From NCBI RefSeq assembly GCF_006345805.1, contig NW_021832231.1:248001-312000 (forward strand): a DNA stretch of 64,000 nt. The letters are read 5' to 3'. The position numbers and the translations under genes were made by a program. Positions 2,541 through 42,870 of this stretch are shown here, piece by piece. Numbering within the stretch: position 1 is the stretch's first letter; every line of letters begins with the position of its first letter. This DNA comes from Octopus sinensis. Its lineage: Eukaryota. The notes beneath the pieces are model-generated. The model was not told the origin of the DNA. It made no database searches and was given only the letters and a program-made list of their open reading frames with translations.

Positions 2541-3106
2541 TAGGGTCAATTAATTCCCTTGGTTAAGCGCAACAGATCACAGTTTTTCTTTGGTTAGGTG
2601 ACCACTATCTCACTATGTAAGGTAGGTTAGTGACCTTTATTTGTGCCTTTTCGCAAGCCATGTTCTACTGGTGTAAACGTATTTCACTACATTAAGCAAA
2701 GATTTTAGAGCTTAATTTAGTCAGCAATGCCAATTTGGCAGAGATAGCGACAGATAATCGACTTTATTGCAAACTAAAAAGAAAGGAAGGCGACTCAGTC
2801 CCTCCTTGTAGTCCTCCAACTGACACTTTCAGTCGTGGACTCTGAAATAGCCAGACTATGACTCAGTGATGATAGACTGCGCGGTAAGGAAACCCTCGCC
2901 AAACGGAAATAGCCTGTCTAGATCACGCTTTATTGCATACGACGTCCAGCACGAAACTGAAAATTCTAGTTTACAACAAATATGAGCTCCTTTTCTGAGC
3001 TCCATTGACAATATTGATATATTGTCAATGAACGACTGATGATTAGTGAAAAATGCAGTATCTAATGATTTGTTGGAGGTTCTCGTAGATACTACAATAA
3101 ATAGTT

Positions 3107-3329
3107 CCCAAGACACTCCGCTTCCTTCGCTCGCTCGGTCGACGGATTTCAAGGACTAGTCACGATCCAAGAGAGTTTTCTTGGCTCCTGGAACGTCTGT
3201 CGATTGCTGTGATCCGAGGGAACAGCTTCGCCATTCGCGAGGCTGGTCGGGTGTCTCGTGAGGCCTTTAATTAACTTAGCTATCTTTAATTTCTTTCTTG
3301 CTTTCAGAACATAAATTGTTGTAAAAAAA
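3107..3329 (+). mobile_element. 5'-truncated 3' fragment of the CRE-clade retrotransposon, with A-rich tail and 11-bp TSD
   Basis: Near-identical reverse complement of ~3925-4152, with a handful of mismatches in the coding part. Ends GTAAAAAAAAA. Flanked by AATAAATAGTT at 3096-3106 and 3330-3340. Confidence 0.9.
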
Positions 3330-3911
3330 AATAAATAGTTAAGTTTGATCGGAAACACAAATGAGTAATTATTGAAGAAAGTTATAAGCTGGAAGATGTA
3401 TTCGTGCAATGTGCTTTCCACCGAATTATTATTGAACAACCTCACAAATTTTCTTATTTACAGATATCTTATGAATAATATTGAGTTAGCCAATTTTTGT
3501 TCAATTTATAAATGATTTATTTACGGATTTTATGGAAGTATCCAGTCATTACTCGAAATGCTTCAGACGTAAAATATTTATACAATCCGGATAAAAAAAA
3601 TTGTTGTCATTACATCTCGGAATATATGTGTAAAGTAATATATATTAACAAAAACAGTTAAAAAAATATATCAATTAAATGTCTAACCAATGAGTTATTC
3701 ACAATAAAATATGACCTATATTTAGAATGGTTCCACTTGTTCTACTTTTTGTTGGCTCTGTGATTCAAAACGAATGTGACCTAACAGAACGGTCTTCGGG
3801 AAATTTTAAAAAAATTGAATTACAAAACTGTACATTTAATACAGAACACGTTTCGACACATACAAAACACCTTATAATTCGAGATTACGTTGAATTTCCA
3901 CATAGAGAAAT

Positions 3912-6272
3912 TTTTTTTTTTTTTTTATTTTTTTTACATAAATTTAATTTATACAAACAAGACAAAAATTACAGATAGCTAAGTTAGTTAAAGGCCTCAC
4001 GAGACACCCGACCAGCCGCGCGAATGGCGAAGACGTTCCCTCGGATCACAGCAATCGACAGACGTTCCAGGAGCCAAGAAAACTCTCTTGGATCGTGACT
4101 AGTCCTTGAAATCCGTCGACCGAGCGAGCGAAGGAAGCGGAGTGTCTTGGGACCGAAGATCCCGGAGGACTCCAAGGCAATTGGAGTAAAGAGCAGCGAG
4201 TTGGACAGGTGGCCGTACTTGAGAATCTTTCGCTCCTCGGCCTGCCTGGAAGCGTGCCCAGGATTGGCGGCGGACAGCGCGAGATTTCCCAGCGAGAACG
4301 TGTCCGAGCAGGTAGAATCCCAAATAAGGGATTTCCCCTGCTCGTAGGGGAAGGTGGACATGCCGTCAGGGCGTTTGCCATCCCCTCTATCCAATCCAAC
4401 AGGTTCAAGGATAGACGGGATGCCTGCTGAGGCGAGGGCTCTCTGTACGACTGAGTTGAGTTCACTGTGACGGGGGGCACGACCGGCACTCCGCCGGCAA
4501 GCGAGGGGATGCAAACCGTACTCGTCAACAGTTCCCCCACAACGGCATTTGTGCGACTGGCAGATTTTCAGCCCGACACGGAGGGAGATTGCAATTCTTA
4601 GGCATTCCTTGTCCAACAGGTTCCCGATGGAAGGGAGAGGGAGAGCCTTTAACCAGACACCGCTGCTTTCACAGCGACCTGCACGGAGGCAAGCGACACG
4701 GTGTTGATTGGAGACAGGAAGCAGGCCTTCGAAGATTGCCTGACAAGAGATTTCGTCCCATTGGCGCTGTACAGATTGAGAGTTGGGCAGCTTCGAACCA
4801 AACCGAGCCTCCCACCGACCACGGGCTGCAGAGTAAACTTCAGACAATTTCCGTTCGGGGAGGTTTCTAAGAACGATGTCTGAGAGAGTACGAGAAGCGT
4901 GATGAGCGGATAGGAATGCCGGGAGGGCAAGATCGGAATAGGATCTCAAGCCAAGGCCACCCCAGCGCACAGGCAGGGATGCCTGAGTCCAGCCTGGATC
5001 GTCGAAAGCCAGATTGCAAAGAGAGCTCGTACCGAGCCTGAGGATATTGTCAAGGTCGGAAAGAAGGTCGCCTCTTTGAAAGCAGGGTGCACATCTTAGG
5101 GTGTAAAGGATCTTAGGGACGGAGAAGTGGTTTCGGAGGAGGAAAAAAGCCACATGAGGCTCGATGACTTTAAGCTTGTCGATCATTTTGGATAAGTGGG
5201 AAATTTTTCCAGCGAGTGAGCATTCGAGGGCAGAAGGCCCCATGGGGGCACCGAGAATCGTAAGATTTGATTTGTCCGTAATCCGGACGTCTGAGAGAAT
5301 GCCTCGGCACGTGGAAATTGAAGCAGTGAAGTCACTCGGATTTAAGGCAATGTTCACGATTTCGGATTTATTGGCGTTTATAGATAGGCCGATGTCCGAG
5401 AGGGAAGGGAGGATAGAACGAAGGTCGTCGAAAACAGCGTCGGGGGGACCGCAAATGGTTGCGTCATCCAGATACCATATGTTAACTGGGGATCGAACAG
5501 AGTGAGCGATACTGTTAACGCCCAAGGCAAAAAGGACAGGACCCAGGGGATCTCCCTGTTGGACCCCGGTGGCCGAAGAGATGGGAACATCGTCGAACAT
5601 GAGGATACTCGGAGAAGCGTATGAGAGATGTACAAGGGGATAAGCGAACGGAACCAGTTCGCGACAGCACTCCAGCAGGTGGTCACGTCTGATGGAGTTG
5701 AAAGCGTTTGAGACGTCTAGTTTGACCATGATAGCCGACTGGGAAGATTCGATGAGTTCACGGAGAGAATGAACGGCCGCTTCGCAGCCGTTTGGGACAC
5801 CGACCCCGAGTTGGGCGGGGAGAAACACTTGAGACAAAAAGGGGACAATTGCGTGGCACAGAAGTTTGGCAGAGAGCCTCCGAAAGATATTCCCAACGGC
5901 AATGGGTCTCACGCCGTTGTCCTTTTTCCCGAGGGCAGTAAGGTTGGCGGAAAAGAAAATATCACGAGCAAAATCGGGGAGGGAACCGGAGATGAAGCGG
6001 TTCCACAGGTTGGTAATTGAGCGTAGGAGTTTTCGACCAGCTTCGGCGGTAGTGGGAGACGTCAGGTCTTTCAGATGACCTGGTCTCAGACCATCTACAC
6101 CACCACTGCTTCCAGGTGAAAAGTCCCTCAGGGCTTTCAGTACAAGAGTTTCCGAGACAGCAAAAGGATTGAGAGCGAGGGTGTCAGGGGACGGCTGAGG
6201 CCTGAAGTCGTTTGGCTGAGGGGGATGTTTTTCCCTGAGGGAATTCAAACAGCAGGGGTCGTGGGCAAAAAG
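3912..6272 (-). mobile_element. CRE-clade non-LTR retrotransposon (RT plus restriction-like endonuclease), 5'-truncated, recent
   Basis: 12-bp TSD ACATAGAGAAAT at 3900-3911 and 6273-6284, and a poly(A) tail (T-run 3911-3935 on +). Much higher GC than the flanks. ORF uninterrupted. Confidence 0.95.
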
Positions 6273-6416
6273 ACATAGAGAAATATTTTCGAATTTACCC
6301 AACTTGATATCATTGTAATAACATTTCATTAATACCAGTGAGTGTCGAGGAAACTCGTTAACGAGAATACTAAACAACTCATTTGATAGAGTGATTAACT
6401 TATTCTGGATGTACAT
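3984..6416 (-). CDS. 810-aa RT-RLE ORF; the first ~48 aa derive from host flank
   Basis: RT motifs GVRPIAVG, LDVSNAFNSI, GVQQGDPLGP and WYLDD; CCHC-like CRCG..HPLAC; RLE motifs RHSELN, DGKRPDG, WDSTCSDT and ERKILKY. Confidence 0.93.
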   Translation of the reverse strand: MYIQNKLITLSNELFSILVNEFPRHSLVLMKCYYNDIKLGKFENISLCLFAHDPCCLNSLREKHPPQPNDFRPQPSPDTLALNPFAVSETLVLKALRDFSPGSSGGVDGLRPGHLKDLTSPTTAEAGRKLLRSITNLWNRFISGSLPDFARDIFFSANLTALGKKDNGVRPIAVGNIFRRLSAKLLCHAIVPFLSQVFLPAQLGVGVPNGCEAAVHSLRELIESSQSAIMVKLDVSNAFNSIRRDHLLECCRELVPFAYPLVHLSYASPSILMFDDVPISSATGVQQGDPLGPVLFALGVNSIAHSVRSPVNIWYLDDATICGPPDAVFDDLRSILPSLSDIGLSINANKSEIVNIALNPSDFTASISTCRGILSDVRITDKSNLTILGAPMGPSALECSLAGKISHLSKMIDKLKVIEPHVAFFLLRNHFSVPKILYTLRCAPCFQRGDLLSDLDNILRLGTSSLCNLAFDDPGWTQASLPVRWGGLGLRSYSDLALPAFLSAHHASRTLSDIVLRNLPERKLSEVYSAARGRWEARFGSKLPNSQSVQRQWDEISCQAIFEGLLPVSNQHRVACLRAGRCESSGVWLKALPLPSIGNLLDKECLRIAISLRVGLKICQSHKCRCGGTVDEYGLHPLACRRSAGRAPRHSELNSVVQRALASAGIPSILEPVGLDRGDGKRPDGMSTFPYEQGKSLIWDSTCSDTFSLGNLALSAANPGHASRQAEERKILKYGHLSNSLLFTPIALESSGIFGPKTLRFLRSLGRRISRTSHDPREFSWLLERLSIAVIRGNVFAIRAAGRVSREAFN

Positions 6417-6751
6417 TCAAATATTTTAAATCACTAGACAACTTTATTTATGCAGTAATCTTCGTTACATTGATGTAAATGCCTTTGCAAGTCTACACAC
6501 TTTAACAGAGCTGTAAAAATCCTATTTTTGCATTAAAGTTATATGCCAACAGATATCATTTTTCTACCACCAAAAATCATTAGTTCGCTCAAAATTTTGT
6601 ATTTTACATTACTGACTGTGTAGTATTACTGAGAGAACGAAAATGTGCATGTACACGCCTTCATCAGTGCAACCCACTATGTATACTTTATTATTCTCAT
6701 ATAAGGATTACGAAAGTGACTAATGAACTAGGTTGGCTGTCCATTGAATTA

Positions 6752-7400
6752 GACACCAAAAGTGTAGAAATTACTACAAATCAAGTTAATGGAGTAATAC
6801 TAATCACAGCACAAGCAGATGGTGTGTTTGTTTACTCACAATAGATTGCAACCGCTGCCGATACCCTAATCCCAGCAATCTTCTATGCACAGAAGATTTT
6901 CCTTAAATTAAAAATTTCGGTGTTCTAATTTACTAACCTGATTATTTGTTCCAATTTTTCTTTGTTCCACTTTTTAGCTCTATTAGTGTTAGATGCGCTA
7001 GTCACAAAGATAAATCATAATTTGAAAAAGATACATGTCGAGCACTAAGATTTGACCCTCTGTAAAAAGACGTTCCCGATTGTAATCTCCATTGGTATCT
7101 TAATCCTGAAATGGACAGCTATTCAGAATTCTCTTAATATGACTTTATTGACATTAATGTGATTGATTATTCATTCTAATATTTCTTTGCTTCTTGCTCT
7201 GTCTGACAAAAGCGTAAAAATAAATGCAAATCGAGCTCGAGAGGCAGCACTAATCACGGAGGATGCCTATGGTGTGTTAGTTTACTCACAATAGATTGCA
7301 ATCCCTGCCGATATCCCGCATCAAGCAATCTTCTATGCGGAAGGGATTGTGCTTAATTTAAATATTCGGATGTCATTAATTAACTAACCTAATTATTCAT
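6752..7400 (+). repeat. Diverged direct repeat (~6752-6952 and ~7204-7400) duplicating the last two exons of the LRR gene
   Basis: Both copies share the 23-nt intron GTGTGTT..CACAATAG and a Cys-rich terminal exon (DCNRCRYPNPSNLLC vs DCNPCRYPASSNLLC), and the sequence downstream of the stop is also similar. Confidence 0.8.
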
Positions 7401-7792
7401 TCTTGTTCCTCGTTTGCGACACCACTTGCCAGAAATTCTTTCTTAGATGCTAATCATGGATAAAACACAATCTTCCCCCGCTTTAATAAATGTGGCATTC
7501 CTGTAAAAATGTAATTTAAACTACAATCATGCAAACAATTTAGTGTTCATATCCCTAATGAATAAACTAGTCGCTAATCCTGTGAGAGAAGAAGAATTTG
7601 TCAACTTGGACTTTTAACTACCCACTGAAAATCTCAAAGAATAGGAATCATCCCTCGTTGGCCAATACAAACAGTCTCAGCTTCTGAAGATAATGACGAT
7701 GGCTCAGATAAGCAAACAGAGCCAGAAAATATAGAGAAATTACTACGCACAAATGTTTAAAAAATGCTAAATCTGCCACTTTGTTTGCATTC

Positions 7793-8627
7793 AAGACCCT
7801 GCATTACTCGATCCCGTCGACAGACTGATTTATCCAAAAAATAAAACGAGTGCTAAATCGAGGCTAAAAACGAGGCAATCCTTATTGACAAATTTTTATT
7901 AATTTCACTTTGTCGTTATAAGTAAATTTGATGACTTGTGCAATATACCGGTCTCCCCTCTATAGGAATCTGTTTAGAGTGATTTGATTGTATATAATAA
8001 AATTATTTGTCACCCTTCGTCCCCTTTGTCCTATATTTATTTTGAAGGAATAATACTTAAGTAATAATGAAATGTTTTAATATTTTCGGCGACTCATCTA
8101 ATTTAGTTAACTTCTTAATTTCGCCCCTGATATAGAATTTTAATAAGTTTTCTTCTTTTGTTTATTAAATTTAACATTGTAATTTCTGTTCTGATTATTT
8201 TTTACTGCAGCTGTTTTTTTGCCAGTTTCATCACTTAAAAAAATGTGAAAGGATACATGTTTATCAAATTTTCGGTTGAGTACTTTTATTTGTATGTCAT
8301 TATTGTTTTAATCCAGAAGTTGTTTTTATTGTTACAAATTATAAAGTATACAATCCATAGTCGAATAATCACTGGCCAGATTATATATGTCGACTACGAC
8401 CTCAGTTGTTTGCCTGAATGTCAGTTCTAAGCAATGTTGTATAGGATTTGTGTGCGAGGGGAACAATCAAAATGAATATCGAAAGACCCTGTATTACTCG
8501 ATCCCGTGAACAGACTGATCTATCCAAACAATAAAACGATTGCTAAATCGAGGCTAAAAACGAGGCAATTCTTATTGACAAATTTTTATTAATTTTACTG
8601 TTTCGCTTTGTCGTTATAAGTAAATTT
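7793..8627 (+). repeat. ~140-bp direct repeat (7793-7929 and 8483-8627)
   Basis: AAGACCCTG(C/T)ATTACTCGATCCCG...TTATAAGTAAATTT occurs twice at high identity. Both copies keep an open frame, DP(A/V)LLDPV(D/N)RLIYP..SRLKTRQ..LTNFY*. Confidence 0.85.
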
Positions 8628-8699: not shown

Positions 8700-9670
8700 T
8701 GTTAGATGAGGGAAATGGAGGAAGCCAAGATCAAGCAGGAGGCTCAGATGGACCTTCTGACCAGCAGGGACAATCAATTGCGGTTTCAGAAGAACGGGGC
8801 AGTAACGCTCGCGATGTTCCTAAAATAAATTTACGAGTTTTACCAAATTGCCTTTTTAGCTTTCTCTTCGCTCGCATCCATGTGTTCTCAATATTTGAGT
8901 ATGGATGGAGCGGTCCAAAGGGTGAACAAAATGTTCGGAGTGATTTATCGCAGAATGTGAATAAATCCTTCGTCCAATGTGCACAATCCCACTATAGGCT
9001 GCCCAACCATCAGTAATGATATAGGTGCCGGGAAGTTCACGTCGAACGATAACTTCATTGAGTGTTTCCACTGTCTTGTCTAAAGGATAAATGGAAAAAA
9101 GAACCTGCAACTTCTTCAAAAAAGCACTTTCTAGTTTCCCTGTCTATTCCACCCAATACCCAATGGCCTGGTCGCCAATGACCTCGATGGTACTTTCTGT
9201 GAAAAAATTTGCACTCGTCGATTTCCACTATCGACTCTTCTAAAAATTAAAATTAAATGAATTACGTAATGTATCTTCATTAACCACGAGTCTCCCAAGT
9301 TTAATAGGAGCATTTGCAAGAGACACCGTAATAAGTTCTCTGCAAAAGTTCGTCCAATCTGTAATCGTATTTTGCGAAATTTCTAGTTCGTACGAGATGA
9401 GATTTTCTGGGTAATTTAATGCCCACATATACGTAAGCATCAAAATTTTCGCTAACAGTAAATGACTTCCTAAAATTAGTTTAAGGATGACTTACTGGAA
9501 AACCAGCTGTTCATTCTTATACTTCGAGAAGTTTTGCATGGAATGCATAACCAAATTGCGTTGTCCACGTTATCGCCGAAGAGCCTGTTATAGAGACAAT
9601 AACCGGTTATATTCCTGCATTATTTGCTCATCAGACTTGATTGCAGCCGCATCAACAATAGACAAACCCA
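8700..9670 (-). mobile_element. Merlin (IS1016/ISXO2-like) DDE transposase, frameshifted
   Basis: WLCIPCKTSRSIRMNSWF zinc ribbon; IVEIDECKFFHRKYHRGHWRPGHWVLGGIDRETRKC; GTYIITDGWAAY..INHSEHFVHP..HTQ. TIRs not identified. Confidence 0.85.
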
Positions 9671-16906: not shown

Positions 16907-18140
16907 CTAAAACAAATAGTAAAAATTATTTATCATCTTAACTCTACTGATTGAATCAAATGCTTTAGATATGTCAATTCTCATTATGTGATACTCCTCT
17001 TTATATTTTTGGCACAAAGCACACATCCATTTGTGGGTCCAAACAGCATCGGAATTTAATCTTCCAGAGACAAATCCAATTTGGCTAGGTCCTATAAATT
17101 CATGTAGTGGGCCTTTAATTCTCTCCAGAGCAATTAGTGATAAAATTTTACGCAGTGAGTTGAGTAGTATGATTGGTCTTAAGCTGTTTAGCTTTCCTTT
17201 TTTCTTCCCCGCTTTATGTAAGGGGATTAAATTTCCGATTCCAATGTTAATTATGGACTGTTCTTCAAAAGTTTTGTTCAAAATGTAAGTAATAAGTTTT
17301 TGAAGCTCTTCAGGAGCATATTTCATGAGCTCTGCATTAACATTATCTGGACCTGGAGCTTTTGAGTTGTTTGGTCTGGTCACAGATTTTTTAACTTTCG
17401 TTAAAGTAATTTTTTTTGATAGCTTTCTGGGCGCTCCATCAAAAGGATAAAGCGTTTCTTCGTTGTCAAAATTCGAAATATTTTTCAAAGTGGTCGGCTA
17501 TAGTGTCTGTGCGTGGTTCTTCCGAGTTCATCATGAACTGTTAGGTTTTCAGATTTCTTCTTTCGCGCTAGCATCTTTACAGATGCATACATTTGCGCTT
17601 CGTTTTTGTACTTTCCCACTTCATTTTCAAGGTTTTGTAGCCTTGTTTCGTAATTTTTCTGACATTTTTTCTTGATTTATCGCATGATTTTGTTTCTTTG
17701 GATTTTGAACTCATCTGCTTTCACTTGGTTGTGGGTGTTTATGTATTTGATACGTAGATCCTTTTGTAAATGAGAAAGATAATATATATCCGGGTCATGT
17801 ATTTCTTTGAAGGTTTTGGGAATTGTCCCAATCGTATGTTTAGCCACTGATTATATTTTGTTTGCGAGTTTATTCCATATACTTTCACCAGGTAAATTGA
17901 GATTGATCGATTCTATGGTTTGTGATATTTTAGTTGAGTAGTTATTTCTGTAGTCAGGATTGTTTCTTAAGAGTTCGATTGCAAATCTGGCTTCTCTGTG
18001 TCTGTTTTTGACTCTGTTAATCTAAAATCTTCTCTTTAGGAGAAGTTTGATTACCAATAGTTTATGATCACTTGATGTTATTTGAGAGCGATTTATTCTC
18101 TTTCAAATCAAAGTCGGATTATATAGCAGTTTAGGAGATT
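16907..18140 (-). mobile_element. RTE-like LINE fragment (end of endonuclease plus N-terminal half of RT), 3'-truncated
   Basis: SDHKLLV; KAPGPDNVNAELMKY; LRPIILLNSLRKILS; DISKAFDSI. Stops and frameshifts upstream. Confidence 0.85.
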
Positions 18141-23768: not shown

Positions 23769-24757
23769 AAGGGCAACATTTTTTTGACTTAAAAATACAA
23801 ATTGCCCTTAGAGAGTCAATTTAATAGACCGTAAAATTTCAAAAATTGACTAAACAAATTGAAGAAATTGACCTAAGAAATATTATTTACAACCTAAAAT
23901 TTGAAATAATTTTATACATTTTTTTTGTGAAATTAAGTCATTTTATAAAATAGTTCACTCCTATCGCCGTCGAGACTTCCGGCGTCATCGGCGAAAAGTC
24001 TTTTTCCTTTTTGAAAAAGCTAGGCCGCATGATTTCCCATAAACGGGGATTTCCTTGGCTATAGTACGTGGAAACTGTGTTTCCATTTTATACATTGTTT
24101 ATCAAGTTATTAACAATCAAGTAATATTTTACATTTTCCGATTTACAATTTCTATCCTTTGTTAAGATTTTGTTTAGAATCGGAAATGATTCTTCACTAC
24201 GCACGATATAGCTTAACATTCAATCAATACAGATTAATCCAAAGGTGAAATGATCGTAGAAATTCATCTTTTTTAATCATCTTTTTTAATCTAATTGTTT
24301 ATTCCACATACGTCTGAAATAATTAATATTTTTTACTCTTTGTGGTTTTATTAATAAAATGAAATTAATTGAAGTTAATCTTAATTCAAGGTCAATGTAA
24401 CAGGCTGCCCATAGGTATCGCGTGGCCCATGTGACATTATCGTCGTTAGATCTTCATGAAGTTGTTCATTAAATAAACATTCTTTCACTCTTTTAATAAG
24501 CAAAGGATTCCGTTCTAAGGTTTAAAATTAAGACCTAATTATATTTTTTAAATTTATATTTAAAAATTGACCTAATTACAAAAGTTGACCTAAAAATCCA
24601 AAAATTGACCAAATTGACCTGACAAACTTTTTTGGACATTTTTTTAATTAATCATCAGATAATCAGATAATTAAGTTATTATTATTTTTATGATTGGCGG
24701 ATTGCCATTATTTTTAGACTAAAATCGAAATTGACTTTATTGACTTATGTTGCCCTA
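23769..24757. mobile_element. Non-autonomous hAT-type element (~990 bp)
   Basis: TIRs AAGGGCAACAT (23769) and ATGTTGCCCTA (24747-24757); 8-bp TSD GTTATTAT / GTTACTAT with one mismatch; many subterminal AATTGAC(C/T)(T)AA repeats at both ends. Confidence 0.75.
23954..24120 (+). mobile_element. Diverged CRE-clade 3' fragment nested in the hAT element
   Basis: FTPIAVETSGVIGEKSFSFLKKLGRMIS..ISLAIVRGNCVSI, homologous to FTPIALESSGIFGPKTLRFLRSLGRRIS..LSIAVIRGNVFAI of the 810-aa ORF. Confidence 0.8.
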
Positions 24758-27661: not shown

Positions 27662-29220
27662 CAGTACCGGTCATATGTTTTAGACATTCTGAAAAAATCC
27701 CAGTGTTTGATTTTTCTAAAGAAAAATCTTATTAAAAAATGCTTTTCATTAAGCATTATCCATTTTTTTTAGTTATTTATTTTTTCCCAATCTCATCGTC
27801 ACTGTATTTTCGACATCTTGATCTTTTTATAGATTTTGTCGAAACTGGCCCAGTCATATGTTTTAGACATTTACGATGCACATCCATAATCTGGAATTTT
27901 TAAAGTTAAAACGAGTTTTTATTAATTAAAACACAAGTTAGTATTTAGTTACATCTCCTTTTTTTTCGATATTACATCATGTATTCTATTTGGATCGACA
28001 AATACAAGTTTTGAATATAATCATCTCCCATCTTGTTCCATTCATCTTTTGCCATCTCCCATAGTTGCTTAACGTTCTGAGGGTTTCTATTTCTGATTTT
28101 GCTCTTTAAATAATGCCAGCAATTTTCTATTATGTTAAGATCTGGCGATTGTGCAGGCCAATTGTTTAAAATATTCACTCCTTTTTCAAGCAAATAATTT
28201 TTTGTAGACCGTGAAGTATGACATGATGCACCATCTTGTTGGAAAATAAAGTTATCATCATATATCTCAAAAAGCCCTTGTTCCAAGATTCGTTGATATT
28301 CTACGGAATCTACATTTCCTTCGCACAATATCAAGGCACTTTTTCCATCGTGTCTGATACCGCCCCAAACCATGATTGAAGGTGCGAATTTCTGAGTTTT
28401 CGTTGTGTAGTTCGAATTGAATCTATTTCCAGGAGGTCTCATTACGAATTCTCGTGCTTTCGAAATTAATTCGATGCGGCACTCGTCAGTAAAAATGACC
28501 TTATTCCAATCGAATGAAATGTTTCTAGTGCAGAATATTTTTCTCTTCTTGATATTATTAGTTGAAAGTCTAGGTTTTTGGCTGCTATTCTTACGAAAAG
28601 TTCATTTTTGCGTAAGATTCTTCGTACAGTTTCGACACTGACGTTTTCCGTAATATTTAGGTCTTTTCTGATTTCATTCGCTGTTTTTTTGGGAAAACGT
28701 CGAGACTCACGTACAAGATTCCTTTGAGCACGTGCCGAAAGAATACAATTTCTTCCAGATTTTGGTCTGTCGTAAAACCCATTTCCATCCAAATACCGTT
28801 GGTAAGTGTGATTTACGGCGCATCTGGATATTCCAAGTAAAATCGATATTTCCTGTACGGTATGACCATTTTCTCGCATAAAAACAATTCTATGACGCTG
28901 TTCAACAGAAAGTCGTGGCATACTGCTTTCAAATTAATTTAAAACACGTTTCCGATACGAAAAATAGAAAAAAAGTATAAATTTTATTGAAATATAATGA
29001 ATTAAATAAAATGTCTAAAACATATGACTGGGCCAATTTCGACAAAATCCTTAAACATATGAAGAAGTCGAAGATAAAGCGAAGATAAGATATGAAAATG
29101 ATAAATATATAAATAATATAGATAATACTTACTAAAAAACTTTTATTTTATTGGATTTTTCTTTAGAAAAATCAAACACTGGGATTTTTTCAGAATGTCT
29201 AAAACATATGACCGGTACTG
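27662..29220 (-). mobile_element. Tc1/mariner IR/DR transposon (DD35E), young
   Basis: TA TSD at 27660-27661 and 29221-29222; 67-bp identical terminal inverted repeats CAGTACCGGTCATATGTTTTAGACATT...; inner repeats at ~27832-27872 and ~29009-29049. Confidence 0.97.
27938..28921 (-). CDS. Tc1-family transposase with three apparent indels in homopolymer runs
   Basis: Paired-like HTH MPRLSVEQRHRIV..SGR; IFTDE, MVWGG, QQDGASCH, WPAQSPDLNIIE (35 residues between D and E); restored C-terminus KKGDVTKY*. Confidence 0.9.
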
Positions 29221-41818: not shown

Positions 41819-42672
41819 TCACAGAAATGTTCTACATAAATAATAAAATTGTACTTTCTGCGAGTTTTGTGATCAAAAAGCACGATTTGTAAATATTTAG
41901 TAGATGGAATGGAAATCCTTTTTGTAATTTCGCTGTTATTAGATCCCTACCAATAATAATAAACCGTCAAAGCCTTTGGATCTGTACATATTAACTTTCT
42001 GTCTTTTTTATTCTTAAAAAACAGACCACTGGGGTTATCTGTTATCACATTATAATTGGGAGAAGAATTCGAATAAGAAGCCTGTGTCTCCCAATTATAG
42101 AAACTGACATTAGATTTCTAAAAACCTAAGATCAGTCGGCTTGGGAAGTAATTTCTTTTTTCCAGAAAAAATTGGCTCAAAATCTTCATTGGCCAGTCTG
42201 TCCTGATAGTCAATGTATCCGCTGATTTCTTGTTTTTTGTTTTTATCCCGAATATATATGATGGTCTGCGTGTCTTAGGGTTACGTAATACGCTGAGTTT
42301 CCCACTTCTGTTGGCCTCTTCTCTTGCTGCCAGTTCCTTGAGAAACACGTCGCTTATTTCTTTATTCAAACTCGCAATTTTCCTGAGAAAATGAAAGAAA
42401 TTGTCAGACTTTGAGTTGAATTTGCTTGTTAGTTTTGCTGCTTCGTTCTCAGCTTTTCGCTGGTCAAATTCTTCTCTTTTGAGCACTTCCCCACTTCCTC
42501 GGTACCCCAATTCTACTAGCTGTCTGGCCAACTCGTCGTCCTGGATTAGAGGAGATGGTACTTCTAGGTAATATAGGTCGAGAGGGGTTATTTGGGAGTC
42601 GAGGAAGTCCTCGAATGTCTGAAATTGGGCGATTATTGTGTCGTCAATTCGGTTTTGATCTTCCGAGGCCAT
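41819..42672 (-). CDS. CFAP299: Cilia- and flagella-associated protein 299 (C4orf22)
   Basis: [43 protein letters not shown]; [20 protein letters not shown]; EISGYIDY; [15 protein letters not shown]; [11 protein letters not shown]. Confidence 0.95.
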
Positions 42673-42734: not shown

Positions 42735-42870
42735 ATTTTTTTGTTCAAAAAATCATTATTATGTTTACGATATATATGTAACCTGGCGGATTGCCAAACT
42801 GTTTCCCCGGATAATGGCGATCGAGAACCGTTGCATTAGCCAGTCCACCTCCCGAGGATCGTGAGTGTGC
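42735..42870 (-). mobile_element. Short CRE-clade 3' fragment with 12-bp TSD
   Basis: Minus frame THDPREVDWLMQRFSIAIIRGNSLAIR matches SHDPREFSWLLERLSIAVIRGNVFAIR of the 810-aa ORF. A-rich tail; TSD AATAATAAATTA at 42723-42734 and 42871-42882. Confidence 0.85.

What the first reader, a model, noticed from the sequence alone, without database searches (positions are those of the whole stretch)
3900..6416. Truncated CRE retrotransposon regains a start codon from the antisense strand of the gene it knocked out
The TSD places the element's 5' end at 6272, yet the ORF continues stop-free for 48 codons into host DNA to an ATG at 6416. That flank is the antisense strand of exons and introns of the disrupted LRR gene. 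The result is an intact 810-aa chimeric ORF: a host-derived leader plus complete RT and RLE domains lacking the usual N-terminal DNA-binding region. One event thus inactivates a secreted LRR gene and creates a potentially translatable RT-endonuclease, which is how retroelement domestication or a new master copy could begin. The in-frame leader could also be chance.
Basis: partly seen in the sequence, partly recalled or inferred. Interest (0 to 1): 0.8.

Follow-up and report, generated by a model that had tools for sequence, protein, structure and literature searches.

The report
Truncated octopus LINE with chance start codon
This is a young, 5'-truncated copy of a jumping gene (a non-LTR retrotransposon with a restriction-like endonuclease) in what is probably an octopus genome. 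Its reading frame happens to stay open into the neighbouring DNA as far as an ATG; that is expected by chance, and the "LRR gene" it was said to have knocked out could not be substantiated.

Summary
The sequence observation is correct. An 810-codon ORF lies at 3984-6416 on the minus strand. An 11-bp target-site duplication (3900-3910 and 6273-6283) and a 25-nt poly(A) tail bracket a 2,362-bp GC-rich element at 3911-6272. The first 48 codons are AT-rich flank. The element is an RT plus CCHC/restriction-like-endonuclease LINE. It lacks the roughly 180-230 N-terminal residues that relatives carry, so it is 5'-truncated.

The interpretation does not hold up.
- In this window's own DNA, 24% of random junctions and frames meet an in-frame ATG before a stop. 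8.8% stay open for at least 48 codons, and 3.2% have an ATG that far out.
- The plus-strand "secreted LRR gene" is a 72-codon ORF followed by four in-frame stops.
- Its only Pfam match is a sub-threshold LRR_8 hit (18 bits against a cut-off of 27).
- It has no homologue in a 5.8-billion-protein word search or a 1.84-billion-protein phmmer search.
- No protein carrying the leader exists in those databases.
- An Octopus sinensis copy of the same family is also truncated and also keeps an intact frame, without an ATG.

Verdict: an ordinary dead-on-arrival LINE insertion of low interest. One loose end is that three independent copies end within about 70 bp of each other.

The parts
3911..6272 (-). 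5'-truncated copy (2,362 bp) of an RLE-type non-LTR retrotransposon, including its 3' UTR and poly(A) tail
   Evidence: Bounded by the target-site duplication and poly(A) tail. GC is 0.52-0.57 against 0.32-0.38 in the flanks. It is 86% identical over 2,243 bp to an Octopus sinensis copy.
3984..6416 (-). 810-codon chimeric ORF: 48 flank-derived codons plus 762 element codons, stop codon included
6273..6416 (-). Host-derived leader (48 codons, about 31% GC), with ATG at 6416-6414 and a second in-frame ATG (M30) at 6329-6327. Both ATGs have T at position -3.
   Evidence: There is no homology to relatives' N-termini.
6417..6419 (-). In-frame TGA immediately upstream of the ATG; this is the limit of the open frame
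6273..6283 (.). Target-site duplication, 5' copy (ACATAGAGAAA on the plus strand)
3900..3910 (.). Target-site duplication, 3' copy
3911..3935 (-). Poly(A) tail, 25 nt with one T at 3927
3936..3983 (-). 3' UTR (48 nt)
5316..5927 (-). Reverse transcriptase domain (aa 164-367); YLDD lies at 5463-5474
   Evidence: Pfam RVT_1, E=3.9e-18. Invariant columns are shown.
4215..4562 (-). CCHC zinc knuckle plus restriction-like endonuclease (aa 619-734; KRPD...D-S-T...K)
   Evidence: Invariant or near-invariant columns C619, C624, H636, C640, R649, H650, E671, P683, D684, D700, T702, K730.
3727..3910 (+). In the empty site it continues through 6284-6315 and then hits TAA TAA.
   Evidence: LRR_8 is sub-threshold and no homologues were found.
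3107..3329 (+). Second, much shorter 5'-truncated copy of the same family (93% identical). It has its own target-site duplication, AATAAATAGTT, at 3096-3106 and 3330-3340.

Best explanation
A LINE-type retrotransposon that encodes an RT and a C-terminal CCHC/restriction-like endonuclease inserted recently by target-primed reverse transcription into AT-rich, apparently non-genic DNA of what is probably an octopus genome. Reverse transcription or 5' joining stopped inside the conserved GDxxAAVRxxASDD...KHP block. The copy therefore lacks about 180-230 N-terminal residues, including the PHD-like finger seen in relatives, and is a dead-on-arrival copy. Its 762 element codons are still intact because the copy is young and descends from a lineage under purifying selection. 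The frame runs on for 48 more codons into the flank to an ATG purely by chance. No functional host gene was destroyed.

Shown here: the element boundaries, the truncation, the intact catalytic motifs, the host origin of the leader, and the chance rate.

Inferred: that the copy is not expressed and is non-autonomous.
For: - Insertion hallmarks: an 11/11 target-site duplication, a 25-nt poly(A) tail and a sharp GC break at the boundaries.
- Truncation: homology to 120 relatives starts at aa 49-60, and they carry a median of 179 further N-terminal residues. Cephalopod-type relatives and the O. sinensis copy in L004 contain the missing block.
- Host leader: it scores -3.3 bits against the N-terminal HMM.
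- Chance rates from the window's own DNA: 24% for any in-frame ATG before a stop, 8.8% for at least 48 open codons, 3.2% for an ATG at least 48 codons away.
- Comparison copy: a same-family O. sinensis copy (L001) is independently truncated. It keeps a 764-codon open frame that runs 22 codons into its flank with no ATG. Between the two copies dN/dS is 0.14 and dS is 0.51, so intactness reflects selection on the element lineage plus youth.
- No daughter copies: no protein with the leader exists among 5.8 billion sequences, and the window holds no second copy of the leader DNA.
- The plus-strand 'gene' fails every test.
Against: - Nothing here measures transcription or translation, so expression of the chimeric ORF is not excluded.
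- The window's own genome is not in the searchable collections. Daughter copies at the DNA level and empty-site alleles could therefore not be sought.
- A 48-codon extension ending exactly at an ATG is in the upper 3% of the chance distribution.
- Three related copies end within about 70 bp of each other, which is odd for purely random truncation.
Confidence: 0.85

Rival explanations
1. The chimeric ORF is transcribed from host sequence upstream of 6416 and translated into a leader-RT-RLE protein. It would represent nascent domestication or a new master copy.
For: - The 810-codon ORF is intact with all RT and RLE catalytic motifs.
- There are two in-frame ATGs in the leader.
- An NCBI gene model in O. 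sinensis (P0011) likewise fuses host intermediate-filament exons to a truncated copy of the same family, so such chimeras do get modelled.
Against: - An in-frame ATG is expected in 24% of random insertions.
- Both ATGs have T at -3, which is a poor metazoan initiation context (sequence; general knowledge).
- The first element-encoded Met is only at aa 231.
- The N-terminal region that longer relatives keep is missing.
- No leader-bearing proteins or DNA copies were found.
- The sister copy in O. sinensis is equally intact without any ATG.
Confidence: 0.03
2. The insertion did hit LRR-coding sequence, but it was an already decayed LRR pseudogene or a lineage-specific orphan gene rather than a working secreted LRR gene.
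For: - In the empty site a single plus-strand frame reads M-hydrophobic leader...HREIFSNLPNLISL**...LYLCSNLRYIDVNAFASLHTLTEL, and LRR-like spacing persists across the stops.
- LRR_8 matches at E=0.0024.
Against: - The score is below Pfam's cut-off (18 against 27 bits).
- With roughly 900 comparable six-frame segments in the window, such an E-value is expected once or twice by chance.
- There are no relatives among 1.84 billion representative proteins or 5.8 billion proteins, although real LRR domains usually hit thousands.
- No LRR-pattern cluster occurs at the locus.
Confidence: 0.1
3. The 5' end at 6272 is not a random truncation. It reflects a preferred end, such as a short RNA template, an internal start or processing site, or a template-switch hotspot. 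Copies of this lineage would then habitually lack their own start codon.
For: - The window copy starts at 'LFAHD'.
- The O. sinensis L003 copy (61-68% aa identity) starts about 8 nt further 5'.
- The L001 copy (86% nt identity) starts 58 nt further 3'.
- Their upstream flanks are unrelated.
- The first element Met is only at aa 231.
Against: - There are only three copies, chosen through a search that favours long ORFs. The rough chance estimate is 0.02-0.05.
- The ends lie inside a conserved protein block, not at a domain boundary.
- There is no Rfam ribozyme or other RNA family hit in 3000-7500.
- Other copies end elsewhere: the 223-bp copy 2, and the L002 copies starting at aa 199 and aa 400.
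Confidence: 0.08

Closest known systems
RLE-bearing (early-branching) non-LTR retrotransposons: the R2, CRE/SLACS/CZAR, NeSL, R4 and HERO clades
   Same: - It has a single ORF with an RT followed by a CCHC motif and a PD-(D/E)xK-type endonuclease, and no APE domain.
- The nearest solved structures are R2 proteins (E=6e-9).
- A 43%-identical barnacle relative is auto-named 'Retrotransposable element SLACS protein'.
- CRE, R2-Hero and R4-Dong types are reported in cephalopod genomes (PMC10294476).
   Different: - Classical CRE, SLACS, CZAR, R2, R4 and NeSL elements are mostly target-specific (PMC4640811). The two copies here sit in unrelated AT-rich sites with 11-bp target-site duplications, which resembles HERO behaviour.
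- Relatives carry PHD or USP N-terminal domains.
- Clade assignment by RT phylogeny was not done.
Dead-on-arrival 5'-truncated LINE copies (for example L1 or R2 truncations) and host-TE chimeric ORFs or gene models
   Same: - Truncation at the 5' end, with the 3' end, poly(A) tail and target-site duplication intact.
- An ORF that runs open into the flank.
- The O. sinensis model LOC115229886 (P0011) fuses host exons to a truncated copy of the same family.
   Different: Here the flank happens to supply an ATG 48 codons upstream. There is no evidence that this is used.
Domesticated reverse-transcriptase genes (for example rvt genes and telomerase-like co-options)
   Same: Only that an intact RT ORF sits outside a full mobile element.
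   Different: Domesticated genes are single-copy, syntenic across species and under selection at the locus. None of this is shown here, and the copy looks days-old in evolutionary terms (perfect target-site duplication, nearly pure poly(A) tail).

Membership tests
Non-LTR (LINE) retrotransposon copy made by target-primed reverse transcription | 3' poly(A) or simple tail, and a target-site duplication flanking the copy | tested here: met
   25-nt poly(A) tail at 3911-3935. The 11/11 target-site duplication lies at 3900-3910 and 6273-6283.
Non-LTR (LINE) retrotransposon copy made by target-primed reverse transcription | Reverse transcriptase domain with a YxDD active site | tested here: met
   RVT_1, E=3.9e-18. 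Y315-L-D-D318 is invariant in the alignment.
Non-LTR (LINE) retrotransposon copy made by target-primed reverse transcription | 5' truncation relative to full-length family members | tested here: met
   Homology starts at aa 49-60. Relatives have a median of 179 aa more at the N-terminus. No same-family full-length copy was available.
RLE-bearing LINE group (R2/CRE/NeSL/R4/HERO) | C-terminal CCHC motif plus a PD-(D/E)xK restriction-like endonuclease, and no APE domain | tested here: met
   C619, C624, H636, C640; R682-P683-D684; D700-x-T702; K730 are all conserved. Pfam reports only RVT_1 and no Exo_endo_phos. R2 proteins are the best PDB matches.
CRE clade (CRE1/2, SLACS, CZAR) | RT phylogeny grouping with the reference CRE elements | not tested
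   No reference CRE, NeSL, R4 or HERO sequences were available. The only support is an automated 'SLACS' name on a 43%-identical barnacle protein.
CRE clade (CRE1/2, SLACS, CZAR) | Site-specific insertion (spliced-leader RNA genes in the founding members) | tested here: not met
   Two copies in the window lie at unrelated AT-rich sites (TTTCTCTATGT and AATAAATAGTT). The O. sinensis copies have unrelated flanks.
HERO clade | RLE-type LINE with mostly non-specific insertion (PMC4640811) | tested here: inconclusive
   Non-specific insertion is met. Phylogenetic placement was not tested.
Leucine-rich-repeat protein gene (the alleged host gene) | LRR domain match above the curated threshold | tested here: not met
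   LRR_8 at 18 bits against a cut-off of 27, E=0.0024, one repeat only. A relaxed LRR regex finds no cluster at the locus.
Leucine-rich-repeat protein gene (the alleged host gene) | Uninterrupted coding frame in the pre-insertion allele | tested here: not met
   The empty-site frame has TAA TAA after 72 codons and two more in-frame stops within 139 codons. The apparent 'intron' between donor-like and acceptor-like sites would be only about 24 nt.
Leucine-rich-repeat protein gene (the alleged host gene) | Detectable homologues | tested here: not met
   0 hits in the 5.8-billion-protein word search. 0 hits at E<=0.001 in the phmmer search of 1.84 billion representatives.
Domesticated or expressed chimeric RT gene | Transcription and translation of the ORF, and conservation at the locus | not testable with these tools
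   No transcriptome, population or orthologous-locus data were available. The window's genome is not in the look-up collections.

The most novel reading that the evidence does not exclude
The truncated copy is transcribed from host DNA upstream of 6416 and translated from the borrowed ATG. That would give an N-terminally re-headed RT-endonuclease which is either being co-opted or can still retrotranspose. If so, the clustering of 5' ends in three related copies might mean this lineage routinely depends on flanking sequence for its start codon.
Probability: 0.03. Interest if true: 0.5.

Novelty: new member of a known kind. Interest (0 to 1): 0.12.

Why it matters
It matters little as it stands. 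5'-truncated LINE copies whose frames run open into flanking DNA are a routine by-product of target-primed reverse transcription, and about a quarter would pick up an in-frame ATG in DNA of this composition.

The practical value is negative. The locus should not be annotated as a disrupted LRR gene or as a candidate domesticated RT without expression data.

Two points are of mild interest to transposon specialists:
- This is a young, non-site-specific RLE-type LINE family in cephalopods with intact catalytic motifs, which implies recent activity.
- There is a possible preferred 5' end.

Tried and rejected
1. I checked whether the leader is really diverged element sequence. BLASTP extensions into aa 28-48 showed a 'KC..DIK' match to relatives' 'KCADGDIK' at the right spacing. 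A profile HMM of 94 relatives' N-terminal regions scored the leader at -3.3 bits, below random six-frame decoys, so I rejected this as chance.

2. I looked for the exact 810-aa and 781-aa (M30) products, and for a neighbouring 190-aa ORF, in public assemblies in order to find the source genome, an empty site or an orthologue. None is on record.

3. I looked for a same-family full-length copy. The best available was an 86%-identical O. sinensis copy that is itself truncated. Other O. sinensis loci belong to more distant families.

4. An Rfam scan of 3000-7500 for an HDV-like or other ribozyme that could define a 5' end found nothing at E<=1.

5. I attempted a Pfam scan of raw plus-strand frames by window reference. 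It was replaced by the X-masked peptide and a regex scan.

6. Literature searches for USP- or PHD-bearing CRE-like LINEs and for octopus CRE elements gave only general clade definitions (PMC4640811) and the note that CRE, R2-Hero and R4-Dong types occur in cephalopods (PMC10294476).

7. Clade assignment (CRE versus HERO and others) could not be tested for lack of reference sequences.
Full report
**What is there**

- On the minus strand an ATG-initiated ORF of 810 codons runs from 6416 to 3984. It is the only ORF longer than 200 codons in the 64-kb window.
- Read in element orientation, the sequence ends in a 48-nt 3' UTR and a 25-nt poly(A) tail (3935-3911, one T). The 11-mer TTTCTCTATGT follows directly (3910-3900).
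- The same 11-mer lies at 6283-6273, 11/11 identical.
- GC content is 0.52-0.57 between these repeats and 0.32-0.38 outside them.
- The junction at 6273/6272 falls exactly between codons 48 and 49. An in-frame TGA lies immediately upstream of the ATG.

**What the element is**

- Pfam finds only RVT_1 (aa 164-367, E=3.9e-18).
- A search of 5.8 billion proteins returns more than 1,000 relatives. The best long ones are 50-53% identical and 885-985 aa long. One barnacle relative is auto-named 'Retrotransposable element SLACS protein'. The closest hit is an Octopus sinensis protein, 85% identical over half the query. The host is therefore probably an octopus.
- In the alignment the RT motifs (K232, D234, Y315-L-D-D318), a CCHC knuckle (C619, C624, H636, C640) and a restriction-like endonuclease signature (R682-P683-D684, D700-x-T702, K730) are invariant or nearly so.
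- The nearest solved structures are R2 retrotransposon proteins (E=6e-9).
- It is thus an RLE-type, early-branching LINE.
- RLE LINEs are divided into the CRE, R2, R4, NeSL and HERO clades, of which HERO is the mostly non-site-specific one (PMC4640811). Among molluscs, CRE, R2-Hero and R4-Dong types are found almost only in cephalopods (PMC10294476).
- I could not run a reference phylogeny, so 'CRE' remains a plausible but untested label.
- The element is not site-specific. A second, 223-bp copy of the same family (93% identical) lies at 3107-3329 on the plus strand. It has its own target-site duplication, AATAAATAGTT.

**Is it 5'-truncated, and is the leader host DNA?**

- Local alignments to 120 relatives begin at query residues 49-60 (mode 57). 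The relatives have a median of 179 residues upstream of that point.
- Those upstream residues include a conserved IPKxAR block, in some a PHD-like finger, and the block LRxxVNxKLxxGDxxAAVRxxASDD.
- Cephalopod-type relatives and a degraded O. sinensis copy (L004) carry that block in full.
- The window copy starts in the middle of it ('LFAHD' corresponds to 'LVASDD').
- A few BLAST extensions reached into the leader through a 'KC..DIK' coincidence. A profile built from 94 relatives scores the leader at -3.3 bits, below random decoys from the window.
- The flanks of the different copies share no similarity.
- The copy is truncated and the leader is host sequence.

**Is the start codon remarkable?**

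I walked upstream in-frame from every position on both strands of the window, with the element removed. That gave 120,234 junctions.

| Outcome | Share of junctions |
|---|---|
| An ATG is met before a stop | 24% |
| The frame stays open for at least 48 codons | 8.8% |
| An ATG lies at least 48 codons away | 3.2% |

- Both leader ATGs (6416 and 6329) have T at -3.
- The first Met inside the element is at aa 231, inside the RT.
- A same-family copy in O. sinensis (L001:8745-10986, 86% identical) is independently truncated 58 nt further in. It nevertheless has a 764-codon open frame that runs 22 codons into its flank with no ATG.
- Between the two copies dN/dS is 0.14 with dS of 0.51. The intact frames therefore reflect selection on the active lineage plus the youth of the copies, not selection at these loci.
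- No protein carrying the leader exists in the database. The leader DNA is single-copy in the window.

**The 'knocked-out secreted LRR gene'**

- Joining the flanks at the target-site duplication gives a plus-strand frame that begins MVPLVLLFVGSVIQNEC... at 3727. It reads across the site as ...HREIFSNLPNLISL and then meets TAA TAA (6316-6321). Further in-frame stops follow at 6427-6429 and 6514-6516.
- The stops cannot be spliced out plausibly, because the only donor-like and acceptor-like pair is about 24 nt apart.
- Pfam gives one sub-threshold LRR_8 match (18 bits against a cut-off of 27, E=0.0024).
- The X-masked 138-aa peptide has no hit in the word-indexed 5.8-billion-protein search. It also has none at E<=0.001 in an exhaustive phmmer search of 1.84 billion representatives.
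- A relaxed LRR pattern scan shows no cluster at the locus.
- At most this is a badly decayed LRR-like remnant. There is no evidence that a working gene was inactivated.

**Conclusion**

The best explanation (about 0.85) is a young, dead-on-arrival, 5'-truncated RLE-LINE insertion in non-genic AT-rich DNA, whose frame is open to an upstream ATG by chance.

The rivals are:
- expression or domestication of the chimeric ORF (about 0.03);
- insertion into a decayed LRR pseudogene (about 0.10);
- a preferred rather than random 5' end (about 0.08).

The last rival rests on an unexplained observation. The window copy, the L003 copy (a 61-68% identical family, starting about 8 nt further 5') and the L001 copy (58 nt further 3') all end within about 70 bp of each other, inside the same conserved block. 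No ribozyme or other Rfam family matches the region. With three copies chosen by a search that favours long ORFs, this is suggestive at best.

None of the decisive tests can be run with the collections available, because the window's genome is not in them. Those tests are transcription across the junction, daughter copies at the DNA level, an empty-site allele, and the family-wide distribution of 5' ends.

Noticed in passing
window 3096-3340 (+): A second, 223-bp 5'-truncated copy of the same LINE family (93% identical to the 3' end of the main copy). It has a short poly(A) tail and its own 11-bp target-site duplication, AATAAATAGTT. It lies tail-to-tail with the main copy, 570 bp away. Together the two copies show that the family is not site-specific.
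   Followed up: yes
window 6272; L003:~5453; L001:8745: Three independent copies of related octopus RLE-LINE families have 5' ends within about 70 bp of each other, inside the conserved GDxxAAVRxxASDD...KHP block. Their upstream flanks are unrelated. This may be a preferred truncation point or a template end; no Rfam ribozyme matches the region.
   Followed up: partly
L001:6001-11231 (Octopus sinensis VCDQ01003444.1): The NCBI gene model LOC115229886 (P0011, 901 aa) is a chimera of intermediate-filament exons (PF00038) spliced to a truncated copy of the same LINE family. That copy keeps a 764-codon open frame and is flanked by a direct repeat of about 47 bp rather than 11 bp.
   Followed up: partly
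relatives P0016, P0041, P0054, P0058, P0064, P0066 and others; P0018, P0020, P0031 and others: Many relatives of this LINE carry an N-terminal ubiquitin-specific protease domain (PF00443/PF13423) or a PHD finger (PF00628) fused to the RT-RLE ORF. Some barnacle ones are annotated as 'ubiquitin carboxyl-terminal hydrolase'. I found no paper describing this architecture.
   Followed up: no
window 27972-28921 (-): A Tc1/mariner-type transposase split into two ORFs: DDE_3 (E=1.6e-16) and HTH_23/HTH_Tnp_Tc3_2.
   Followed up: partly
window 16907-17488 (-): A 193-aa ORF with an RVT_1 match (E=2.5e-9). It is a fragment of a different LINE family.
   Followed up: no
window 8856-9443 (-): A broken ISXO2/IS1595-like transposase remnant (DDE_Tnp_IS1595, E=1.5e-5, just below the cut-off) spread over three short ORFs.
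   Followed up: no
window 42118-42672 (-), with 42768-42866 (-) and 23954-24061 (+): A 184-aa ORF with DUF4464 (CFAP299-like, E=8e-22). Next to it, and at about 24.0 kb, lie weak C-terminal fragments of other RLE-LINE families (53-58% aa identity to the main copy).
   Followed up: no
window 6757-6946 / 7207-7397, and 7793-7929 / 8483-8627: Two pairs of dispersed direct repeats (75% and 89% identical) lie just beyond the insertion, presumably short interspersed repeats. The first pair contains a spurious 'HNRLQxLPI' LRR-like motif in one frame.
   Followed up: no
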